Shown in pieces: positions 20,150 to 41,800 of a DNA stretch of 64,000 nucleotides; positions within the stretch are counted from its first letter, which is position 1, and every line of letters starts with the position of its first letter. The DNA is from Adineta vaga. Its lineage: Eukaryota; Animalia; Rotifera. The stretch spans positions 3,410,001 to 3,474,000 of the forward strand of contig CP075495.1 of NCBI GenBank assembly GCA_021613535.1, in the 5' to 3' direction. The position numbers were made by a program, and so were the translations under genes. The notes beneath the pieces were generated by a model. It saw nothing but the letters and a program-made list of their open reading frames with translations, made no database searches and was not told the origin of the DNA.

Positions 20150-21571
20150 TTATAAAGGATAATCATCAGATTTGGTTGTTTTTTTCCATTGTCCTATCAA
20201 TGGATTATAGAATAAAAAGAATTCATCTTCAAGTGGGATATGTTTTATATCGGTATATTTAAGCTCAAATGAAAGTTCATTGTAATGACCAAAGAAATGA
20301 AGTTGAATATCGATTGATTTTGTATTCTTTGTTGATATTTGAAATAAAAATGGCTCACGATTTATTTGTTTAATTTCTTTTCCTTCACTTTTGATTTGAA
20401 TAGTTTTAAAAAGACTAAATGGAATATCGGGTTTATCTGGATCACGACCTTCAATCAAAATTTCATCATTTTTACTATCAGATGTATGCTGGTGTGTAAT
20501 TCGTACACGTCGACGGACAATCCATGGTGGAATAGGTATTTCTAATCTTTCCATTAAACCTTGCATGATTGTATCACTAAATGCATGGATATTAACTGTA
20601 GCTAATGAATATAATGGTGTTCGTTGTAGATTACCAATGAATAATTTTTTACCACGTTTGCCAACTCGTCGTGGAACATCAGCTGCTGGTGTAACTGTTA
20701 AACTAGAACCTTGAAAAACAAAATCAATAGAAACGAATTACTTTTCTAGATAAAAACTATTCTTCATTACCAAGTACAAGGCAAAGATCAGCTTTTTCTG
20801 CATGTGTAAATGCTTTCGTTATTTCTTCTTCAGGTAAATTTTCACCAAAATTAATAATTGAATCTTTTAAATATCCACCACAATCAGGTTTATCACATCG
20901 ACGTCCTGTGAAATGATCAAGACGTCCAGCAGCTGCATCATAATCACGTAAATAGTTTGCATTACATGTTGAACACGTTTCTAAATTCATATTACCATGT
21001 AATTCAGCTAAATATTTTGGATTCATTCCACTGCGTAAATGTAACCCATCACAATTTTGTGATACTAAACATTTTAAAATTCCACGACGTTGTAATTCAA
21101 CTAATGCCCTAAATGACATAGAACAAGAAATTCTTTTCTATTAACAATAAATTATGAATTATACATATGTGTCAGTGATGGAATAGCTTTATGCATATCG
21201 TTGATCACAACAGCTTTTTTTGATCGTGATGAATTATGACTAATTGAAAGGAAGAGTGAAATGCGATTTTCAAAATAAGTTCCTCGTATAGTTACTCTCG
21301 TAATTCCCATGCACCTGGTCCAGTTGGTAGAACTGTATCCATTGAGCTACGAAAATCTGGTATGCCTGTTGAAGTAGATACTCCAGCTCCTATGAAATCG
21401 ATATACATTTGTGTATACTGAAGATCATTTGTTAAAAAACCTACCAGTAAATACAATGAAATGTTTACTGTCTTTGATCGATTGAGCTAATTGATCTAGT
21501 TTATCATCCAATTTTTGTTGATCATCAAAATATTCTTTCTTCATTTCGTTGTCTGATAATCCATGAGCCAT
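20150..21571 (-). CDS. NAD+-dependent deacylase, sirtuin class IV (SIRT6/7-like); multi-exon
   Basis: FIVFTG|AGVSTSTGIPDFRSSMDTVLPTGPGAWE, LVSQNCDGLHLRSG, LAELHGN, Zn ligands CSTC/CDKPDC, DSIINFGENLP, LG|SSLTVTPAA, NLQRTP. Confidence 0.93.
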
Positions 21572-23323: not shown

Positions 23324-26300
23324 ATGTTATCACGTCGATATTTACGTCGTAGTTTTCTTGTTATTCTTATTTTACCTATTGTTCTTTTATTTTCACTTGC
23401 ACTTTATCAAAATCGTCATGTAATATTCTCAGAAAATTCATCCGATCATCATCATCCGGATACTCATGATTCTTATTTATCTCATGATACTCTTCCTAAT
23501 CATAATCTCAGATATGATTTTCATTCTAAACCTTTAATAACTGAAAATCCAATACAATCGATTCGAAAAATACCACAAACTTCGCAAAATTTTCAACCAA
23601 ATGATAATCGACCTATGCAAAATTTCGATTTTATTCAACAAAATCAAACATCAATATTACCTGTTATCAAAACAGCGAATCTTGATCGTTTTGTGCATCT
23701 GGATTTAAAAGGTGCTGCACCAAAATTAGCTTATTTGGAAAAATTATTTCCCTATTTAAAAAAACTTGGTGCTAATGGTTTACTTATTGAATATGAAGAT
23801 ATGTTTCCATATACTGGTCGATTACGTATTTTACGACATGGTCTAGCTTATTCAAAAGCTGATATTGAACAAATACTACAATTAGCAGAAAAAAATCATC
23901 TTCAAGTGATGCCATTACTTCAAGTTTATGGACATTTAGAATATGTACTTAAATTAAAAGAATTTATGCATTTACGAGAGGATGTTCGTTACCCACAAGT
24001 AATAACACCTTGTCTCGAAGAAAGTTATCAATTACTCTTTGGTAATTTTGAAATCATTTCATAGAAAAGATTTTAAATGATGAATTTTTTTCCTTTTTGA
24101 TATAGAAATGATTGATCAAATGTTAATTCTTCATCCATCTATTCCATATCTTCATATTGGTTGTGATGAAGTCTACTATCGTTTAGTTCATCCTCAATGT
24201 AGTAATTTACAAATTCGTGATGATGTTGAGTTGTTTATCAGGTAAAATGTTTTTTATTTTTCTTATCAAAAGAAAGAAATGTTGTTTACAGAAAAAATAC
24301 AAAACAAAATTCTTTTTTTTTTCATTTTCATTATCCAAAAACTTTTTCATCTGCATAACAAACGTACAAAAAGCCATCTGTATCTTTATTTTCATTATAT
24401 AAGGTTTCCATTGTTGCACTTAATACTGGTTGTTTACCATATACTCCAATATAGAAAAATAGAGCATGTTCAGCACGTAAACGTAAACGTCGTCGAATAT
24501 TATAAGCAAATTGACCGAATGAGAGTTCCGATGGTACGAGAAATTTTTCATTATCAAGACGTGCTAATGTTGTCTCATTGCATGATGATGAGGATGAGGA
24601 TGTAAATGATCGAAATAATGATGTTGATAAACTTGAGGATGATGCTGACGACGAAGATGATAATGGTTGAACAATAACAGGTATACGATCAGGATAACGT
24701 CTTCGAATACGTTCGGATTCGAATCGACGTTGTTCAAGTGAATTTTCATGTTTATATTGCCAGTTCATTGTATATGATCAGAGTGATTGTAAGCACGTTA
24801 GTCGAATTTTTTTTGTCGTATGTTGTATATTAGTAGTACCACTACCGGTTTTTTTTGACAGGTTGGAGAGGGCAAAGGGCGTGTTCACAGTTATGCAATG
24901 AGAAATAAGAAGAGGTTAGCAGCACCTAATTGCTAATACACATTTAATGATCGGATCCAAATCGCAGCAGCAATAATGACAAACGAACGAAGAAAAAAAA
25001 CCCGAAGAAAAGAACGAAAGAAAGAATACGAACGTGTCGTTGTATATGCATACACTTCACGTATACATACATGTCTTAGTTTTCTCCTCCTCCTTCTGCC
25101 TTTTATTTTATTTATTATGATAATTTTTTTCAATTGATGACAGTATAACGAAAAGAACAACGCAGAAGGTGATGACATTCTTCTTTACAATTTTAAAATG
25201 TTAAATAACCACAAATAAAAAGGTTAAATCTTCAATAAAAATAAAAATGAAAAAAAGAAAAAATGAAAGACTTAAATTAACCTTAGATATTCAACTCGTG
25301 ATTTCTTCTTACTATGGGTTTTGTTTTAATCTATTCTTAGACATGTTACTCGTGTCGCTAAATATATCAAATCAAAACGAACAACAGTTAAACTTTTCAT
25401 ATGGCATGATATGATTTCACAACTTGTCAATTCAGGTTCCAATAATGTAAGCAAGACATTTCTATTTATCTTTCGAGTACCGCTACTTCTATTGTTTTCT
25501 TTTTGATTGACAGATTACGGAATTAATTGAACTTGTTGTACCAATGGTATGGGCATATGTGGATGATGTTAAACCATGGTTTGATGATACAGTGTGGATG
25601 AAGTAAGATTTCGCTTTTCTTTTTCTAACTATACAAATCATCATAATCATTTCATTTCAATCGAATTCAATCAATGAATGTGAGCACATCAATGAAGGAC
25701 ATTATCGAATACTTCATGTCAATACACTTTGTTGATAAACTATAATATAGCATATGTAATAGTAATACGAAGAATTCTTGAGATAACAACTTTATTCTCT
25801 TCTAAGCTTGTCTCTCATCCTTTTCGTCTCTTCTGAGACATTCGACTTTTTTTGTCCAAGAATCATTATTCATATCAAGGTTTTATATCGATAGATAAAC
25901 ACTTCACTTACCATCAACACATTCATCATCGTCATCATCATCATAAGTACTATTCACGCAAACAGCTTATCTAAGAATACTTCTTACCTCACTCGTCTTT
26001 CTTTCGTTTTCACCCGGCAAAGATATCAAACTTATTCATATATTTAGATTTGCTATGTTTCCTGAAGTATGGGTTGCAAGTTCTTTCAAAGGTTCGTCAG
26101 GTGAAACAACAACAATGAATTATATTGGTCATCATCAACGAAATCAACAAACATGGCTCGAAACAATGTATAGCGCTTTTCAAAAGTATAAAGTCAATTT
26201 TACTGGCATTGCAATCACTGGTTGGTCTCGATACGATCACATGCTTCCATTATGTGAATTTCTCCCTTCGGCTATACCTTCACTTGTCTATACATTACAA

Positions 26301-26898: not shown

Positions 26899-28987
26899 GA
26901 AGAATTTAATTGAATAAAGAAGGGTTATAAATCTAGTCATATTTAATCGAAAAACGAACAATGAGTAGACATTGACTTTTGATTTTGAAAACACAACAAC
27001 CATGTGATGTATGTTTATCGTGCATTCCAAACATGTTTTATTCTTTGTCTCATTTTTTTTATTCTATTGTTTTTATTAAGAAATTCTGTTTGGTTCTGAT
27101 CTAAGCGAAAAAATATATATCTAATTATTAGTGATTGATAATTAAATGTTATTCTACTGAGAAATAACAATGTATGATTTATCATTTTAATATTTCGCAG
27201 ATGAATATAGTGATCGTGCTCATTAATTGATCTTTTTATCAAAGTTAGATTCTTTTGCTCTTGCATTGTTAAACTATTGTGAATCTCGTTGTCGCACGTG
27301 TACTGTATACTACATCATTACTAATTCAATAGATCTTGTTTTTCTAAATTCTGTTTTGGAAGAAACAATTGCTAGTTTTCGACGACAAGTCGAAGAAATT
27401 AGTCAGTGACCAATGAAGCCACTTTCTGTACATTCTGTGATCTACTTGATACTTTATGTTTTGTTTAAACACAACTCAGTTTCTTGTTATCATTTTCTTG
27501 ATGCTGACGATTTATTACAATATTAGCCATATTCTGTTCGGTACCATGTCAATTTCGTCCAGTAGTTTGTTTCTGAACTCGACGATATGCATTTAGAATC
27601 GTGATGAGATCAAGAATAATATTCTATGTTTTTCTTTAAATTTCTTCATATTCTCATCTATCTTCAGACTCAAGAAGAAAGGAACATATCCTTCACCTTG
27701 CAAGACTATACATGTGTTTGAGTATGTTTGCAAAAAAAAGAGACCTTTTTTTCTATAAAATTGAGATCAATAGCAGTCGTACTTGTTATCAGAAATATGA
27801 CGCTCAACGTCGTCATACACACATGCTTTATTTTCGTATGTTCGATTTTATTGTACTGCGCAAGAGGGAAATATTTTGATTCATAGTTGCGCATCACCTT
27901 GCTGAGAATGTCATCAATTGTTAAAATGATTGTATACTTATAGACTATGGTAAAAACAAAAGATATTTATATCATGATAACCATCAGTACAAAGAGTAGA
28001 AATTCGTAGTGACCTACGCTGCAGTCCTGGTAGTTTGTTAATAATATATTCGTCATTCGTACATCACACAAGCAATTTTGTTTTGTCAAACATTAGCTCA
28101 TTATTTGTTTGTCAGATGTGTATAAAAACATGTCGATTGTGTAGATTGATGGGTCCCTATCTAATTCTCTTACCTTACCTGTGCTCAACAGACCATGATA
28201 GATATCTTAACAATGCTATCATAGATTGTGATCACTGTACAATTGACAAGGTGAAGTAAATCGTATTCTTCTTGCAAATGATCAAATACATAAATCACAA
28301 CTAAATCGACTAATTTGACATAATATTACTGTAATAATAAGAAAAAAAGCTCCTTTTAAATTCATTAATATAAACCGCATTCGATCGTGACTACTTGAAA
28401 AATATTCTTGACAAACATACGATGTGAAAGATTTAAAATTAAATGTTGCCAAAATACATTATGTACTAAGAATACTGATTATAAGATGAATCTTATCTAT
28501 CATTTTATAAATATCATACATGTATTTTTATTAGAATTGTACAACTATGCTGTACAATAGTTCGCTTGTTACTTCATATATATATATAGAGAGAGTATCA
28601 TTAAGATCTGTGAAGTTTGATATACATATCTTTGCAACATATTGGAAGTAAAGATTTTATGAAAGTATGTGATAAACATTCAACCTTGACACGTAATTAC
28701 CATATAAACAACATCAAAAATAAGTAATTAATAGCTATATGATATATGTTTTGTCTTTCTATTGTTTATGACTTTGTATGAAGTATAAACTGAAGAATAT
28801 AGTGACATTTCGAATGAACCAAGAGAGAGAGATCACGCTAACCTGGCATAACAATAGGATATATATATATAGTCAGCTATCTTAGTTGAATAAGAATACT
28901 TTTGTTTATACTTACCAGCGATCAGTTTAAAAAATATTTTGTATTATCCATTGTTCTATTTCAAATTACTTCATATCATCAATTAAG

Positions 28988-31297
28988 ATGAATGTTCCAA
29001 CGATTATGGTGAATAAAGAACAAATGAAAGATTTGCTCAGGTTTGTTCATGAAAATGAAGCACTGTTAAAACAATATGGTGCCATTAAACTCATTGCACC
29101 ATCTGAACTCGGCGATGTTTTGAAAACTAGACGAATTACATCATCTTCTTGTTCAACTATTCAACGATTGACACCATTAAATCGAAATAAACATATCTTT
29201 TCAGTCACTACTACAAATCAAATTAACAAAGAATCTCACAAACAATTGTCGACTTTAAATGAAGTTACTTTTTGGAAAATATTATCTCGTTCTATTGATG
29301 AACAATACATGTCAAATGTAACTGTTACACCTAATTCAAGTTTTTTTTTGAAAAACGTTTATCAATCTGATTTTAATATATATAAATTGCCTAGACAATC
29401 ACTTTTAAAACTCTGTCCTGATGAAATTTTGAACCAATTTGTTCCTTGTTTGATTCGAATGCATGGACCCGGTGCTATTATACCATTAGCTTCTGCTCGT
29501 CAACGTCTCTCTTCTTTCAATTATCATCATGAAGGTGGTACACGACATTGGTATATTATACCAGCTAGTGAACGAAAAGCTTTAGAAGATTTACTAGAGC
29601 AACAACAGAAACTAGATTCTATTTGTTTGAATCATGGACATATCTTTATAGATCCTTCAATATTGAATACACATAAAATTCGTTATTATAAAATAGTTCA
29701 ACAACCAAATGAAATCGTTATTCTATCAGCTGGAATTTTATCACAAAGTTTCAGTGAAGATGCAAATTGGAATGAATCTATTGATTTTGCATTACCAAGT
29801 TGGATTAATGATAAACATGCAACTACTGAAACATCATGTATGTGTAGATTTCATATTAATGCATTACCAGATACAATTGATACTAAAGTCTTCGATCGTT
29901 TATCGGTTCGACGATATGTTCGTAATGATCTAAATATATCTACCGATGATTTATCACTATCAGATTCAGGTTAATTTAGCAATACATATCTTTTTTTCCA
30001 TTTTTTTTTCTGTTGATTTATTTTAGATGATCAAACTACATATCCTTGGAATTTATCATTATTATCAAATATTTCAATCGGATCTCCAGGTGAATTCTAT
30101 ATTAATTCAATTGAATCTTCTCTCAGTATTCATGGTAACGATGAAGATGAATATACGAATTCTAGTAACCGTCCAAGTCCAATTAGAATTTCCATGTAAG
30201 TTTTTATATTACATCCGAACGAAAACAAATTTATTTATTTTTTCATGTATAGAGATGGCAGTAATCTCAATCCATCAAATGAAAATATGTCTCTTCACGA
30301 ACTTCATCGACGTCGTATTTTATCAGGATCACCGGATATGTCTGATCATGATATGTCACCAAATAATAAAAGACCCCATCATTTATCTTTTGAAGACATG
30401 TTTGATTTCATAGCAACTCCATTCAGTCCATACTATCCAGCCGATTTGTCGTCCAACGATGATTTAGATAGTCCACCTCACATATCAGTATGTATTTTTC
30501 TGTTCCTCAAAAATTAAATAATACGATCTGTTGTTGTTTTGTTTAGACTAATTCACCAGCGTATGATAATAGTTCGAATACCGTTGCACCTGAGAACTTT
30601 GAAACAATGACACATATTAATCGAACTCTATACATATCCAATATGAAACCAGACGTGACTAAAGATGATATTTATCGTCATTTTACTGGTTGTATCAAAG
30701 TTACAATCGGACAAAGTTATTTACCACCACATTTGAAGTATGAACATTATTTTTGTACATTTAATTGAAATGAATAACGTTTTATTTTAGTTATGCATTT
30801 ATTCTTCATTCTACAGAATCATATGCTGAATATAATCGAACAAAACCATTTGATCATCGACTTTTCGGTGCCAATTGTTGCATTGAATATGCTAAGGGAA
30901 AAATGAATCTTGCTTATGAAAATCCAAATTTCGATCAATGGAGTATTGTAGTCAGACATATACCTGAAAATGTTTCTGAAGAATCTATCCGTAATTTATT
31001 TTCTGATTGCGAATTTATGAAATATATTCCGGCACGTCATCGTATTAAAAGAACAAGGACATCATCAGTTAATCCAAACAAAATATTATGGGGGTATGTG
31101 TAAAACGATATCTTATAAAAAATAAGATTGAAACAATCTTAACTTATTATCATTTACTTATCTGTTTATTTAGATATGCTTTTCTATATTATACCGATTC
31201 CAACAGAATCAACAACATCATACAAAATTCCAATAGGTATAAAATTAATGGTGAATTCTTACATGTATCTCTATTCGAATCAACGACATCGCAATGA
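28988..31297 (+). CDS. KDM4-like JmjN + catalytically degenerate JmjC fused to two C-terminal RRMs (667 aa; exons 28988-29969, 30027-30195, 30253-30487, 30547-30737, 30791-31093, 31174-31297)
   Basis: All five GT-AG introns are phase-compatible (2004 nt CDS). JmjN: VPTIMVNKEQMKD...YGAIKLIAP. JmjC: SFNYHHEGGTRHWYIIP, KIVQQPNEIVIL, NESIDFA. RRM1: RTLYISNMKPDVTKDDIYRHF...YAFI. RRM2: SIVVRHIPENVSEESIRNLF...GYAFLYY...INGEFLHVS. Confidence 0.85.
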
Positions 31298-31711: not shown

Positions 31712-33032
31712 TTAAGAAACTTGCATGACATAAGAAGCAATACCACACATATTCTGTCCTCGTAACACAAGAATATATCCTTGTGCGCCCCATGTAACAC
31801 CTGTAAGCAAAAGATGACGATAAATACATTCTTAAATCAGTCTGTACGTACCCCAACTATTTTTACATATCCAATATAGATCTCCTGAAGATGTTTTTCC
31901 GTATCCAACAAGTTGCATCTATGAGCAAAGAGAAAGCTAAAGGCGGTGTGAGTTGTTTTTTCGATTAAATACCATATGATCGATTGTGGTTTTTGAACAT
32001 GATGAATCCTTGTAAATACCTAAAATAACATTAGAAAAATAAGAGTCAATATAACAATCTAAGAAAGATATGTCACACCAGATGTATAAAATTGAAAGGA
32101 TGTTTGACTAGCATCGATACCAACAAACAAAGTCGAATTTTGAATCCATGTGACCATTGTATCTTCATTTTGAGTCTTAAGTCGCATAACTTTATTAAAC
32201 TAAAATGACGATATAATGATTAGGAAAATATAAAAATTTAAAATCTACGTATACAAACGTGAGTAAATGGTGCACATTTTTTTGGTAAACACTGGTTAGT
32301 CACCGATGGATAATCTTCTTGTCGACAGATACCACCGAGTTTTGTAATACATTCAAAGACATTGATTTCTTCAGGACAACAATCATCAATACGTGCAAAA
32401 CTACCTTCTACAAGATTTCCTGTTTGAATAGCATACCAGCTTTCAGTCACTTCTGGAAAATAGTGAAATTGTTTTAAAGAAAGGTCTAGCGAACGTAGCG
32501 TCGTAGATATTCTCACCTACAGCAACGATTGGTTCTACTCGACCTACAATTCCTTGATCTTTTACCGGTGAAATAACACCTTTGGTGCGCCAATCAAGAG
32601 ACTCAGGTACATCATTAAATTCAAGAGAATTGCTCGTATTTGTTGAATGTAGTGTAATAAACTTTTTTGTTGAAGATACCAATTTCTAAATCAAGCAACA
32701 ACTCAATCTGTCAATCAATATTCATGATATGTAGATTTCGTTTACTTCAATACGTTGATCGGCCAAATGATTGATGCTAAGTTTAAATGTTGCATTTGGA
32801 TGTGTACGTTCATAATCGCGAATTCGATTCACATTTTTAAGAAAAATTAATTTATGCTCTGCTTCTTCTGCTGCTGATTTATAATGTTTATTAAAATTAT
32901 GTTTGAATTTAAGCCAATCAAATGAGGAACTACTAGCAGCAAAACCCAACAAAACAAGAAAAATGATCAACTATACAAAGATTTAGAAAAAATTATTGAT
33001 AAATAGTGTCGATGACTTACCTTTGTATGCAT
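31712..33032 (-). CDS. Cathepsin L-like papain-family (C1A) protein with signal peptide and I29 prodomain; catalytic Cys absent; multi-exon
   Basis: MHTK|LIIFLVLLGFAAS; ERFNIN-like EEAEHKLIFLKNVNRI; FKLSINHLAD; PESLDWRTKGVISPVKDQG; GIDASQTSFQFYTSG|IY; IDHMMQLVGYG; YWICKNSWG|VTWGAQGYI...NMCGIAS. Confidence 0.9.
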
Positions 33033-35163: not shown

Positions 35164-35550
35164 CTATTGAGTGTTGTTTTCAACACATTCATTGAAACGA
35201 ATGCGATGTTTTTGACACGTATGCGGCTCACAGCATGGTACGATTCCCCATTTACATAAAACACAAATACGACCTTTTCTGTCTTTATAATGTGTTGTAT
35301 TCATTTGATCACGCCGTTGAAATGTTTGCACATGATTGAATGAATTATCATCTTGAGTACTAAGATCATTATCCATAATTAAATTACGTAAAAATGTATT
35401 TGATCGTTCACGAAGTATTTCAAAATCTCTTTCTTCATTGCTTGATTGACTGATGTCAGCGGAATTTTCTTCAAAACCAACACTCAATGATACGAGTATA
35501 AACAAGAGCACAGAACTAATCGTTACGAATTTCAGATGAAAAATAGTCAT
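35164..35550 (-). CDS. Secreted cysteine-rich prepropeptide with a C-C-CC-C-C (ICK/knottin-like) mature region
   Basis: Signal peptide MTIFHLKFVTISSVLLFILVSLSVG, acidic pro-region, dibasic RR and RK sites, then ICVLCKWGIVPCCEPHTCQKHRIRFNECVENNTQ*. Confidence 0.8.
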   Translation of the reverse strand: MTIFHLKFVTISSVLLFILVSLSVGFEENSADISQSSNEERDFEILRERSNTFLRNLIMDNDLSTQDDNSFNHVQTFQRRDQMNTTHYKDRKGRICVLCKWGIVPCCEPHTCQKHRIRFNECVENNTQ

Positions 35551-38840: not shown

Positions 38841-41800
38841 ATGTTACATTTTTTCTTCACATTATTTCTTTTATTCATATCTTCAACATTATCATCACGT
38901 TTAAAATATCGTGCGAGTGTTAAAGAAAATGCTGATTTATATTATACAATAACTACACTTGATAAAATGATATCTGTTAATTATCATCAATCGATGGAAT
39001 TTCTGAATTTAAATTCTCCATATACAACATATTTTCTTGTTGATGGACAAAAATTACGTACGAGTCGTTTAATTGATCGTGAAGAATTTTGTCGGATTAA
39101 ATTATGTGAAAATTCTTTATGTCATCCATGTGAAATTGAAATGGATTTTGTTTTAAAAGAAAATGGTCAACCACGTGATATTATTTCTCTTATATTAACT
39201 GTCGAAGATGTGAATGAATATCGTCCAGAATTTCTAGATGGTTCTTCCAATGGTCAACTTATTCAATTAAATATTAGTGAAGGCGTGCCTGGTATGTATG
39301 TTTGTTACACAACGGATGACCTTTAATGTATGAGTTGCTGACATTCTAGAAGCTAATTGGAGAGTCTGTGACGGACGGTTTCAGCGGATTTTCTTTTTTT
39401 TCTTCTTATTCTCATCTAAATAGCTTACGAGTCTCATTATGGAAGCAGATGTCTATTTCATCCTCTGTTTCTCTTAGTTGGACACGTGTTACCCATTCCA
39501 AGTGCTACAGATAAAGATGGTGAAGATGATGACCTTGTTTATTGGCTTGAAAAAACGAACAAAATTCCATTTGAACTTGTTTCATTTGGTTCAAATCAAA
39601 TTGGTAAAAGAAAACTAAGCCTCTTTTTCTTTCTATCTCTGACTTGATTGTATCTTCTAGCTTTGAATGTAACTGACCCATTGGATCGTGAGACACGCGA
39701 TTTCTATGAACTTAAATTAACTGCATGTGATCGAGGAAATCTTACATCAACAATACCAATACATATATCTATTAGTGATATTAATGATAATGTACCTTTC
39801 TTCGATCAACAAACTCCTTATAATATAACAATATCAGAAAATACACTTCCATCATTGACGAAATCATTACTACGTATTCATGCAATTGATAATGATTCCA
39901 ATGAAAATGGTCGTATTACTTATCATTTCAGTTCTCAAGTATCAGAAATCATTCGTCAAACATTTCAATTAAATTCTCAAACAGGAGAATTATTTCTTCT
40001 TCAATCTCTTGATTATGAACAATATAAAGATTATCGTATTCAAGTAACTGCACAAGATTCTGGTCCTGTTTCAGTTCCTGTTTATACTCTGATTATAATT
40101 AATATTGAAGATGAAAATGATAACGCTCCAATTATGAATATACGTGTATCTGAATATTTTCATTTAATTAATAATACATTATATATTAGTGAACGAACAT
40201 CGATAAATACTTTATTAATGCACATTATTGTTCAAGATTTTGATTCTAATTTGAATGGAAAAGTGAACTGTCGAATTGAACCATCGGAACCGAAATTAAA
40301 TTTAACAAATACTATTCATAATATGTTTGCTGTGTATACTAGTCAAGTATTTGATCGTGAAGAACGATCAAATTATTCAATTCGTATTATTCTTGAAGAT
40401 AATGGTTTAAAAAATCGTCATCAAACAGTACGTGAACTTCAATTAATCATCAATGATATCAATGATTCACCTCCCATATTTTCTCAACCATTTTATAATA
40501 TTTCTATTCAAGAAGAAGAAGATTATTTTCAAGCAATCATACAAATCCATGCTTCTGATGCAGATCTTGATGAAAATAGTCAATTATCTTATGAAATGAT
40601 TTCAAATGAATACAAGCATTTATTTTCTATCAATGAAAGTTCAGGTGAAGTTTTTCTTCTAAGAAAATTAAATCGAGAATTCCAAGCTGATTATAATTTA
40701 ACAATACATGTACATGATCATGGTACATATCCATCACAATTATCAACCAATGTTTCTCTTTATATCAATGTCTTGAATAAAAATGAATATTCACCAGAAT
40801 TTCAACAACAAAAATATATTTTTCCAGATATTGATGAAAATCTTCCGATAAATTCATCGATTGGTTTTGTTAAAGCAACTGATCGTGATGATAATTTAAT
40901 TCATTATTTCATGACATCAGCTGATTTGATGATTGATACGTTGACAGGAGAAATTTTTGTACGTAAACAACTTGATTATGATACAAGCCCTTGTATTAAC
41001 ACTATCGTTACTGCTAAAGATCAAGGTGATTTAAGTTCGACATGTCAAGTAGAAATTTGTCTAAATCCAATTAACGAATATTCACCTGAATTTCAACTAA
41101 CAACGCATCCAATTCATATCAATATAGATAATACAAGTTTTATACATTTAAATGCAAGTGATCGTGATCGTTCACCATCAAGTGCTATTTCATTTCATTA
41201 TGGACAAGTATCAAATTGTAATTTTACATTTACTCACTTATTATCGAATGGAACTATTTATTTCAATTTAAAAGAACAGTGTACGGGTGTAGTCAATCTT
41301 CCAATATCTATTAGTGATAATGATCAATATCCATCAGCAAAAATAACCAATAAAACGATTCAATTCATACTTTATTCAAATGATAAATCATTGAAAAGTA
41401 TTCTTTCTAGTTCATCACTATGGAAAGATTCCTATGGAAAATTTCAAGATTTATCTTTTAAAAATCTCACAAGAGAAATGATTATTACAATTATTGTTAT
41501 TACTATTTTAATTTCACTTTCATTAATTGTATGTTTAATCGTTTGTATTTCATATCGAAGAACAAAATTAATCAAACAAAAATCAAAACAAAATAAATTA
41601 CTTGTTAAACAATCACCATCACCATTAATAAATTCATCACAAAAACGCCTTACTCTTCTCTCTTCGTCATCAAGAGCAAGTAAAGATCGGATCTGTTTCA
41701 CTGAGGTAAGTTATTCCTGATTAGCTCCGATTTCAAAGTCATGATTTTACTCATTAGAAAATTGAGAATGATTGTATGAATATGAGAATATAAAAAGAAT

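What the first reader, a model, noticed from the sequence alone, without database searches (positions are those of the whole stretch)
28988..31297. Catalytically dead KDM4-type JmjC domain fused to two RRMs: candidate RNA-guided chromatin reader
Seen: six exons join in frame into one 667-aa ORF with JmjN, JmjC, an S/P/D-rich linker, RRM1 and RRM2. Aligned by eye to human KDM4A, WHTEDMDLYSINY becomes LASARQRLSSFNY (H188->A, E190->A) and YHAGFNHGFNCAES becomes LSQSFSEDANWNES (H276->S), so all three Fe(II) ligands are lost. KDM4-like structural Zn ligands (C..H in SICLNH, CxC in SCMC) appear retained and the frame is intact. Known: KDM4 proteins normally carry PHD/Tudor or C2H2 modules, and JARID2 is the classic dead JmjC, acting as a chromatin adaptor. 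I do not know of a JmjC-RRM-RRM architecture. Inference: a pseudo-demethylase that binds or shields methyl-H3K9/K36 and is recruited by RNA, or links nascent RNA to chromatin, possibly in transposon silencing.
Basis: partly seen in the sequence, partly recalled or inferred. Interest (0 to 1): 0.88.

Follow-up and report, generated by a model that had tools for sequence, protein, structure and literature searches.

The report
Dead KDM4 demethylase fused to RRMs
This bdelloid rotifer (Adineta vaga) gene encodes a histone-demethylase-like domain that has lost its iron-binding residues and is joined to two RNA-binding domains; it is one of at least eleven such genes in the genome, an uncharacterised rotifer-specific family whose function is still unknown.

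Summary
Window 28988-31297 (+) carries a six-exon, 667-codon gene with GT..AG introns of 53-80 nt. Exon 1 encodes a complete KDM4-type catalytic core: Pfam JmjC E 5.9e-19, and an AlphaFold model (pLDDT 86.5) whose 50 best PDB matches are all KDM4 family members (KDM4A/C/D plus the KDM4-like 2w2i), TM about 0.7. All three Fe(II) ligands are replaced (A168, A170, S252) and the Zn ligands are kept. Exons 4-6 encode two RRMs.

The organism is Adineta vaga. GenBank already holds a shorter model of this gene (UJR25494.1, 'hypothetical protein').

The gene is not a one-off. At least 11 paralogues lie in this genome, and homologues occur in other Adineta and Rotaria species. They form one clade in which the triad is lost everywhere, and 10 of the 11 have the same RRM exons just downstream. 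This scan noted paralogues on other pieces of this genome (s1-494441, s1-484915).

An orthologue pair of one paralogue gives dN/dS of about 0.3. The two haplotypes of the window gene itself differ at pN/pS of about 1.4.

No RNA evidence for the junctions could be obtained. The methyl-lysine and 2-oxoglutarate pocket residues are not conserved, so 'methyl-histone reader guided by RNA' remains a conjecture. I found no paper describing the family. I rate it a new variant of a known kind (JARID2-like pseudo-demethylase), with moderate to high interest.

The parts
28988..29969 (+). Exon 1: the whole KDM4-type core (JmjN-like N-terminus, JmjC, Zn-binding C-terminal part) in one exon. An in-frame TAA follows 5 nt after the donor site.
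   Evidence: ORF and splice sites; Pfam; AF2 pLDDT 86.5, pTM 0.89; Foldseek top 50 all KDM4 family, KDM4A/C/D plus 2w2i, TMq 0.64-0.75.
28988..29095 (+). JmjN-like segment (aa 1-36).
   Evidence: Pfam JmjN is only E 0.14. The segment is modelled at pLDDT about 95 and lies within the Foldseek alignments to the KDM4 cores, which span about 300-350 columns. The family-conserved 'PT' motif lies upstream of GenBank's Met13 start.
29498..29788 (+). Pfam JmjC match (aa 171-267).
   Evidence: E 5.9e-19, 69 bits; one search finds the same place in the genome search.
29489..29497 (+). Codons 168-170 (A-S-A) in place of the KDM4A H188-x-E190 iron ligands.
   Evidence: Alignments; family frequencies (position 168: S/A/T; position 170: T/A/S/N).
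29741..29743 (+). Codon 252 (S) in place of the third iron ligand, KDM4A H276.
   Evidence: S21, A14, T6; H in 1 of 46.
29624..29635 (+). C213 and H216, the retained first half of the KDM4-type structural Zn site.
   Evidence: C in 45 of 46, H in 46 of 46.
29837..29845 (+). C284-x-C286, the second half of the Zn site.
   Evidence: 43 of 46 and 44 of 46; aligned to the KDM4D C-S-C.
30027..30195 (+). Exon 2: first part of the S/N/D/P-rich acidic disordered linker.
   Evidence: No stop in 55 codons of 30% GC DNA. Orthologue proteins align through this exon. pLDDT is below 35. Composition.
30253..30487 (+). Exon 3: second part of the linker.
30383..30421 (+). Short motif in the linker, conserved across the family (L-S-F-E-D-M-F-D-F-I-A-T-P here). 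It is a candidate partner-binding peptide.
   Evidence: Linker alignment of 14 family proteins. Not predicted to dock on the JmjC core.
30547..30737 (+). Exon 4: end of the linker and first half of RRM1 (RNP2 L-Y-I-S-N-M from about 30625).
   Evidence: RRM_1 positions 1-22; homologous exon in paralogues; the beta-alpha-beta-beta-alpha-beta fold at P0001 477-547.
30791..31093 (+). Exon 5: second half of RRM1 (RNP1 Y-A-F-I-L-H, to about 30899) and first half of RRM2 (from about 30942).
   Evidence: family profile against nucleolin, Pub1 and PABP RRMs.
31174..31297 (+). Exon 6: second half of RRM2 (RNP1 G-Y-A-F-L-Y-Y) and the stop codon. It is missing from the GenBank model.
   Evidence: Homologous exon downstream of paralogues. 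It aligns to the C-termini of family proteins.

Best explanation
The locus is a real, intact Adineta vaga gene. It encodes a KDM4-derived pseudo-demethylase: a JmjN-JmjC-Zn core with no iron or 2-oxoglutarate site. This core is joined by about 160 residues of disordered acidic linker, which carries one conserved short motif, to two canonical RRMs.

The gene belongs to a bdelloid-rotifer-specific family that lost the catalytic triad once, then duplicated to at least 11 genes per haploid A. vaga genome.

Shown here: anatomy, fold, loss of ligands, family membership, linkage of the JmjC and RRM parts, and purifying selection on at least one paralogue.

Inferred: the protein cannot hydroxylate or demethylate. 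It acts as an RNA-binding adaptor. The RRMs would bind RNA, and the rigid dead KDM4 core and the linker motif would serve as binding surfaces for a protein or chromatin partner, as the dead JmjC protein JARID2 does in PRC2.

A role in RNA-linked chromatin or transposon control is the favoured guess, but it is not shown.
For: - Gene model: 5 GT..AG introns in frame. Four of the five junctions are shared with GenBank UJR25494.1.
- KDM4 core: Pfam JmjC 5.9e-19. PDB phmmer best hits are KDM4D/C/B/A. Family profile against KDM4D gives 8.5e-19. The AF2 model has pLDDT 86.5, and the Foldseek top 50 are all KDM4 family (TMq 0.64-0.75).
- Triad lost in all 42 family rows, which form one clade (SH-aLRT 100, stem length 1.01).
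- Zn ligands conserved.
- RRMs: the family C-terminal profile hits nucleolin at 2.6e-15, and also Pub1, Nop4 and PABP. RNP1 and RNP2 aromatic residues are present. RRM1 folds as beta-alpha-beta-beta-alpha-beta.
- One unit: all 10 genome-wide matches to the exon-5 RRM segment lie just downstream, on the same strand, of a dead-JmjC paralogue. Linker exons are open. Rotaria sordida (P0169) and P0014 proteins align through them. A linker motif is conserved.
- Selection: the paralogue at C5:16.78 Mb against its A. steineri orthologue gives dN 0.09, dS 0.27-0.33, omega 0.28-0.35.
- The genome keeps triad-bearing KDM4, KDM4-like and KDM5 genes, so demethylation is covered elsewhere.
Against: - No transcript evidence for any junction. 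The runs that hold the locus are DNA contigs with the introns present.
- Some A. steineri annotations split JmjC and RRM into separate models.
- In a published A. vaga RNA-seq table, two JmjC+RRM paralogues are almost silent, with TPM at most 0.27 (PMC12220480 Table S2).
- The two haplotypes of the window gene differ by 21 non-synonymous changes (one of them a stop) against 4 synonymous. This gives pN/pS of about 1.4; omega of 0.3 or less is rejected at p<0.001. One contig also has a 1-bp deletion in a T9 run. This copy may therefore be under relaxed constraint.
- Pocket residues for methyl-lysine and 2-oxoglutarate are not conserved. Nothing ties the core to histone tails.
Confidence: 0.55

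Rival explanations
1. This particular copy is a decaying or dispensable paralogue. The family is functional, but the window gene is drifting toward pseudogene status.
For: Allelic pN/pS is about 1.4, compatible with neutrality. A TCA>TGA change at codon 247 and a 1-bp deletion at 29341 occur in contigs of the other haplotype in run X3. No A. steineri orthologue is closer than about 44% identity, although another paralogue pair is 81% identical at dS of about 0.3. Paralogues are expressed at very low levels.
Against: The assembled allele has 667 open codons in 30% GC DNA and all ten splice signals intact. Family-conserved residues are kept. The stop is absent from the sister run X4 of the same sample. 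The deletion lies in a T9 run, where sequencing errors are common, though the platform is not on record. Coding divergence (about 2%) is lower than flank and intron divergence (about 4%).
Confidence: 0.17
2. Two neighbouring genes, or alternative products. One would be a 328-aa JmjC-only protein ending at the TAA just inside intron 1. The other would be a separately transcribed RRM protein. They would be linked but not fused.
For: An in-frame stop lies 5 nt after the exon 1 donor site. Split JmjC-only and RRM-only models exist in A. steineri annotations. No RNA evidence exists. Paralogue L008 (C1:16.92 Mb) has no RRM exons within about 7 kb downstream.
Against: The RRM type co-occurs with dead-JmjC paralogues 10 times out of 10, in the same order and on the same strand, across five chromosomes. 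Exons 2 and 3 are open in the frame set by exon 1, and homologues align continuously from JmjC into the linker. Independent gene predictions in A. vaga, A. steineri, A. ricciae and Rotaria fuse the two parts.
Confidence: 0.12
3. A cytoplasmic or granule RNA-binding protein in which the dead JmjC core is only a protein-protein scaffold. It would have no chromatin role, for example a lineage-specific factor in RNA surveillance or antiviral and anti-transposon RNA pathways.
For: Histone-pocket residues are not conserved. There are no PHD, Tudor, ARID or chromo modules. The family evolves fast and is expanded, and its loci are biased toward chromosome ends (median 1.2 Mb from an end, p about 0.002). 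Bdelloids have expanded Piwi and Tudor silencing genes (PMC12147562).
Against: Nothing direct. The only known biology of the KDM4 fold and of dead JmjC proteins such as JARID2 is nuclear (PMC11241480).
Confidence: 0.13
4. The core is still an enzyme that uses other ligands or another cofactor.
For: The fold, the Zn site, W208 and a basic residue at K206 (R/H) are kept. A conserved H-H-E stretch (aa 180-182) is present.
Against: All three facial-triad positions hold small non-ligand residues across the family. N198 and N290 are variable, and Y132 becomes F. The H-E part of the H-H-E stretch is already present in the triad-bearing A. vaga KDM4-like gene, so it is not a replacement site.
Confidence: 0.03

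Closest known systems
KDM4/JMJD2 histone demethylases (human KDM4A-D, yeast Rph1)
   Same: Best sequence and structure matches. The JmjN-JmjC-Zn core has the same length and topology. The Zn ligands, W208 and the 'ES' of the C-terminal strand are kept.
   Different: The H-x-E...H triad and the 2-oxoglutarate and methyl-lysine pocket residues are lost. There are no PHD or Tudor modules. Two RRMs are present instead. The core is encoded by a single exon.
A. vaga KDM4-like pair (C1:1.63 Mb and C4:8.36 Mb), the closest relative within this genome
   Same: Nearest non-family hits in the genome (E about 1e-14, against 1e-4 to 1e-5 for canonical KDM4). They share the M/H-H-E-G and F-A-L-P-S-W motifs.
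   Different: This pair keeps H-x-E/D...H. It has no RRM exons. The tree cannot name it as the sister group, because the tree is unrooted and based on 138 columns.
JARID2 (Jumonji), the classic catalytically dead JmjC protein
   Same: Dead triad under conservation. Acts as a non-catalytic adaptor and is reported to bind RNA (PMC11241480). The family profile scores JARID2 almost as high as KDM4 over the JmjC core (1e-16).
   Different: JARID2 has an ARID between JmjN and JmjC, a C5HC2 finger and PRC2-binding N-terminal regions. None of these is present here, and JARID2 has no RRM. The Foldseek top 50 are all KDM4 family, not JARID2.
Tandem-RRM proteins (nucleolin, Pub1/TIA-1, PABP, Hu/Sxl)
   Same: Two RRMs with canonical RNP1 and RNP2. 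The profile matches both RRMs.
   Different: None of these carries a JmjC domain. The RRM subtype here occurs only next to dead JmjC genes in this genome.

Membership tests
KDM4/JMJD2 demethylase subfamily | JmjN and JmjC domains close together, forming one catalytic core fold | tested here: met
   Pfam JmjC 5.9e-19 with JmjN weak. The AF2 model aligns over about 340 columns to KDM4A/C/D at TMq 0.64-0.75.
KDM4/JMJD2 demethylase subfamily | Fe(II) facial triad H188-x-E190...H276 | tested here: not met
   A168, A170 and S252 in the window gene. The triad is lost in all 42 family rows.
KDM4/JMJD2 demethylase subfamily | 2-oxoglutarate ligands Y132, N198, K206 | tested here: not met
   F120; N/D/I/V at position 178; R/H at position 186 across the family.
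KDM4/JMJD2 demethylase subfamily | Structural Zn site (Cys, His, Cys-x-Cys) | tested here: met
   C213, H216, C284 and C286 are conserved in 43-46 of 46 sequences. This is sequence evidence only; the metal was not modelled.
KDM4/JMJD2 demethylase subfamily | Demethylation of H3K9me3 or H3K36me3 | not testable with these tools
   Needs an enzyme assay. Predicted to be absent.
JARID2-type dead JmjC | ARID domain between JmjN and JmjC, and a C5HC2 finger | tested here: not met
   No ARID in any exon or in family proteins. Of the ARID loci in this genome, only C2:6.41 Mb lies beside a JmjC match; it is KDM5-like with the third ligand His present.
JARID2-type dead JmjC | Conserved loss of catalytic residues with retention of the fold | tested here: met
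RRM (PF00076) RNA-binding domain | RNP2 and RNP1 motifs with aromatic residues in a beta-alpha-beta-beta-alpha-beta fold | tested here: met
   RRM_1 at 23.5 bits on P0001; 37 bits on paralogues. Profile hits to solved RRMs. RRM1 topology in the AF2 model. RRM2 is complete only with exon 6, which was analysed separately.
RRM (PF00076) RNA-binding domain | Binding of RNA | not testable with these tools
   Needs EMSA or CLIP.

The most novel reading that the evidence does not exclude
Bdelloid rotifers evolved their own multigene family of RNA-tethered pseudo-demethylases. The RRMs would recognise nascent or small-RNA-marked transcripts. The dead KDM4 core would occupy or compete for KDM4 substrates or partners on chromatin. 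The effect would be to stabilise H3K9 or H3K36 methylation at transposons and foreign DNA near chromosome ends. This would be a lineage-specific arm of genome defence evolving in an arms race.
Probability: 0.15. Interest if true: 0.85.

Novelty: new variant of a known kind. Interest (0 to 1): 0.6.

Why it matters
Dead JmjC proteins are rare, and the well-studied example, JARID2, is a key chromatin adaptor. Here a KDM4 core lost catalysis once and gained two RRMs. It then became the largest JmjC group in a bdelloid genome: 11 genes, against 15 other Pfam JmjC matches (several of them exon fragments of the same genes), of which I checked six and confirmed a KDM4 pair, a KDM4-like pair, one KDM5-type gene and one further JmjC locus.

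Bdelloids are ancient asexual animals known for expanded RNA-silencing machinery and unusual epigenetic marks. A conserved, expanded, RNA-binding pseudo-demethylase family is therefore a concrete, testable candidate for lineage-specific links between RNA and chromatin.

The family also offers a natural experiment on what a KDM4 fold does without its metal.

The sequences are in public databases only as 'hypothetical' or 'unnamed' proteins. I found no paper that describes them.

Tried and rejected
- RNA support for the junctions. The look-up of sequencing runs listed no holder on record as RNA. The four runs laid gave only contigs that contain the introns (DNA) or do not cross a junction. Nothing can be said about splicing.
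- Logan-derived proteins. All are exon-1-sized ORFs or genomic contigs, not spliced transcripts.
- Joined spliced protein. Exons were searched by reference one at a time. For full-length work I used the public protein P0001, which lacks 12 N-terminal residues and exon 6. RRM2 of the window gene was therefore never scored or folded as one piece.
- Full-length fold. The mean pLDDT is low (58) and the linker is disordered. It gives no evidence that the conserved linker motif docks on the JmjC core, so I sent no complex prediction.
- A narrow regular expression for the linker motif found only the query. It was replaced by an alignment.
- dN/dS between A. vaga paralogues was not attempted, because 38-45% identity means saturated dS.
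- Placement against JARID2. The profile score is nearly equal to KDM4 over the JmjC core. JARID2 was rejected as the parent on architecture (no ARID), whole-core fold matches and motifs shared with the A. vaga KDM4-like genes.
- Pfam did not call the CCHC-like knuckle that I saw by eye at the end of the C4 KDM4-like ORF.
- Literature searches returned no description of this family.
Full report
**What is in the sequence**

The window is AT-rich (about 30% GC) eukaryotic DNA with short introns.
- The exons are 28988-29969, 30027-30195, 30253-30487, 30547-30737, 30791-31093 and 31174-31297 on the + strand.
- Every intron is GT..AG, with lengths 57, 57, 59, 53 and 80 nt.
- The CDS is 2004 nt, which is 667 codons plus a stop.
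- Exon 1 is a single 327-codon open frame, with an in-frame TAA 5 nt past its donor site.

Each exon was used by reference.

**Identity of the organism and the public model**

A HMMER scan of 1.84 billion representative proteins with exon 1 returned a 100% identical protein. This is UJR25494.1, 'hypothetical protein I4U23_006840 [Adineta vaga]', 617 aa. The genome has 100.8 Mb in 6 contigs, and the window is C2:3410001-3474000.

It differs in two ways. It starts at Met13, and it reads through the last donor site to end in '...ILWGYV*'.

A conserved 'PT' motif lies upstream of Met13, and residues 1-36 fold at pLDDT of about 95. Exon 6 supplies the RNP1 and C-terminal half of RRM2 that paralogues and orthologues have.

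**The JmjC part**

- Pfam finds JmjC at aa 171-267 (E 5.9e-19). JmjN is only weak (E 0.14).
- The best solved relatives by sequence are KDM4D/C/B/A (4e-8), and JARID2 scores 8e-6.
- With a 46-sequence family profile, KDM4D scores 8.5e-19 and JARID2 1e-16.
- An AlphaFold2 model of exon 1, built on the family alignment, has mean pLDDT 86.5 and pTM 0.89.
- The 50 best Foldseek matches in the PDB are all KDM4-family catalytic cores (KDM4A, KDM4C, KDM4D and the KDM4-like 2w2i). They align over about 300-350 columns at TMq 0.64-0.75.

Exon 1 is therefore a complete KDM4-type core, not a fragment.

**Loss of the active site**

HMMER and MAFFT alignments put A168, A170 and S252 at KDM4A H188, E190 and H276. 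In 46 family sequences these columns hold S/A/T, T/A/S/N and S/A/T.

The 2-oxoglutarate ligands are also gone or variable:
- Y132 becomes F.
- N198 becomes D/N/I/V.
- K206 becomes R/H.

The methyl-lysine pocket residues are changed too. Y177 becomes R/K, and N290 is variable.

The Zn ligands are kept: C213, H216, C284 and C286 are present in 43-46 of 46 sequences.

The core is a folded pseudoenzyme. Nothing in it preserves the histone-tail pocket. I therefore do not endorse 'binds or shields methyl-H3K9/K36' beyond conjecture.

**The RRM part**

Introns split both RRMs, so single exons score weakly. On P0001, RRM_1 passes Pfam's gathering score. On paralogues it reaches E 2e-9.

A profile of the family C-termini (alignment A2) hits nucleolin (2.6e-15), Pub1, Nop4, PABP and Hu/Sxl, covering both RRMs. 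RNP2 and RNP1 aromatic residues are present in RRM1 (L-Y-I-S-N-M; Y-A-F-I-L-H). RNP1 is present in RRM2 (G-Y-A-F-L-Y-Y).

In the fold of P0001, RRM1 has the beta-alpha-beta-beta-alpha-beta order at pLDDT 70-89. Residues 308-472 are disordered. They are S/N/D/P-rich, with 24 acidic against 7 basic residues.

Within that linker, one short motif (window 30383-30421) is conserved across otherwise unalignable linkers of 14 family proteins.

**One gene or two?**

There is no RNA evidence. The runs holding the locus are DNA contigs with the introns present, and the one 'RNA?' contig of organism A (28930-29121) crosses no junction. Some A. steineri annotations split the two halves.

Four observations argue against two genes:
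- All ten genome-wide matches to the exon-5 RRM segment lie just downstream, on the same strand, of a dead-JmjC paralogue, across five chromosomes.
- Exons 2 and 3 are open in the frame set by exon 1.
- The Rotaria sordida protein P0169 and the unnamed protein P0014 align continuously from the JmjC core into the linker.
- Independent predictions in four or more species fuse the two parts.

I put about 0.85 on a single gene.

**The family**

The genome holds 11 full-length paralogues of exon 1, at 38-45% identity. Each is a single open frame of about 340 codons.

Named homologues come only from Adineta (vaga, steineri, ricciae) and Rotaria species. The remaining homologues are unnamed metagenome or Logan sequences. 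No named hit is from a monogonont rotifer or any other animal.

On a 138-column tree, the 42 family rows form one clade (SH-aLRT 100) on a long stem (1.01 changes per column). This clade is separate from all triad-bearing JmjC proteins, which implies a single loss of the triad.

A. vaga also has these triad-bearing JmjC genes:
- Canonical KDM4 at C4:7.07 and C1:5.97 Mb.
- A divergent KDM4-like pair with an intact H-x-E/D...H at C1:1.63 and C4:8.36 Mb. This pair is the nearest non-family hit and shares the H-E-G and F-A-L-P-S-W motifs.
- KDM5 at C2:6.4 Mb, next to an ARID domain.

Family loci are biased toward chromosome ends. The median distance to an end is 1.2 Mb, with simulation p of about 0.002. 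This test was chosen after seeing the data.

**Selection**

For the paralogue at C5:16.78 Mb against its A. steineri orthologue, exon 1 is 81% identical. dN is 0.09, dS is 0.27-0.33, and omega is 0.28-0.35. The pseudoenzyme core is therefore constrained in the family.

For the window gene, the other haplotype seen in 2013 DNA contigs differs at 25 coding sites. Of these, 20 are missense, 1 is a TCA>TGA change at codon 247 (seen in run X3 but not in run X4 of the same sample), and 4 are synonymous. This gives pN/pS of about 1.4. Omega of 0.3 or less is rejected at p<0.001.

A 1-bp deletion in a T9 run at 29341 occurs in one contig. It may be a sequencing error.

No A. steineri protein is closer than about 44% to this gene. 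This copy is therefore either under relaxed constraint, under diversifying selection, or partly decaying. I cannot tell which.

**Expression context**

Table S2 of PMC12220480 lists two A. vaga models annotated with both PF00076 and PF02373 (FUN_000023 and FUN_000036). Their TPM is between 0 and 0.27 in whole animals. The stored file is cut and does not reach this gene.

**Comparison with known systems and novelty**

The protein works like JARID2 in the sense of a conserved dead JmjC adaptor (PMC11241480). It is not a JARID2 member, because it has no ARID and its core is KDM4-type. It is derived from KDM4 but fails the family's defining catalytic features.

Searches of the paper library for bdelloid+JmjC, JmjC+RRM and Adineta+demethylase found no description of the family. 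Two other first-stage notes of this scan flagged JmjC-RRM genes on other pieces of this genome. That agrees with the paralogue count.

**Verdict**

This is a new variant of a known kind, and my interest score is 0.6.

Noticed in passing
window 28988-29023 and 31094-31297: The GenBank model UJR25494.1 of this gene appears mis-annotated. It starts at Met13 and misses the last intron, which truncates RRM2. Two family models (P0004 from A. steineri and P0168 from Rotaria magnacalcarata) end at the same 'ILLG' point.
   Followed up: yes
window 29727 and 29341: Contigs of the other haplotype in run X3 carry a TCA>TGA change (codon 247) and a 1-bp deletion in a T9 run. Run X4 of the same sample lacks the stop. 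This may be a null allele or an error.
   Followed up: partly
L017:2276-3943 (-), G000:C4:8.36 Mb: A divergent KDM4-like gene with an intact H-x-D...H triad is one 560-codon open frame. By eye it ends in a CCHC-like knuckle (C-x2-C-x4-H-x4-C). Pfam did not call the knuckle. Its partner on C1:1.63 Mb (L018) has introns.
   Followed up: partly
P0037, P0055, P0057 (P0037 is from A. steineri; the other two were not looked up): Members of the triad-bearing KDM4-like group show loss of only the third ligand (H-E-N, H-E-Q). These look like partial steps toward a dead site, in the group closest to the family.
   Followed up: no
G000 paralogue loci: 9 of 11 family genes lie within 3.5 Mb of a chromosome end, and three lie within 0.3 Mb. 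Simulation gives p of about 0.002 for the median distance.
   Followed up: partly
L008/L015 (G000:C1:16.92 Mb) and L009/L016 (C3:19.49 Mb): One paralogue has no RRM exons within about 7 kb downstream (GenBank I4U23_005478, 609 aa, JmjC only). Another seems to keep only RRM1. C3:19.376 Mb holds a broken copy with stops.
   Followed up: partly
P0165 (Rotaria socialis, 1017 aa): This gene model joins JmjC-RRM to a protein kinase domain. It is probably two merged neighbouring genes, but this was not checked.
   Followed up: no
P0028 (Bemisia tabaci, 1604 aa): A whitefly protein matched in 16 stretches in the exon-1 search. In the one stretch I inspected, His is kept at the third iron-ligand position. 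It is unrelated to the dead family, but its architecture is odd.
   Followed up: no
window 20760-21119 (-), 24334-24768 (-), 39648-41717 (+): The neighbouring genes are ordinary host genes: a Sir2-family exon, an ATG8-like exon and a cadherin-repeat exon. No Pfam match among the nine largest ORFs scanned at 20-42 kb points to a transposon; six of them had no match. Other first-stage notes cover 31712-33032 (cathepsin-L-like) and 35164-35550.
   Followed up: partly
PMC12220480 Table S2 (FUN_000023): A JmjC+RRM paralogue is flagged 'HGT' in the published A. vaga annotation table. This is presumably because it has no metazoan BLAST hits, not because it is foreign.
   Followed up: no
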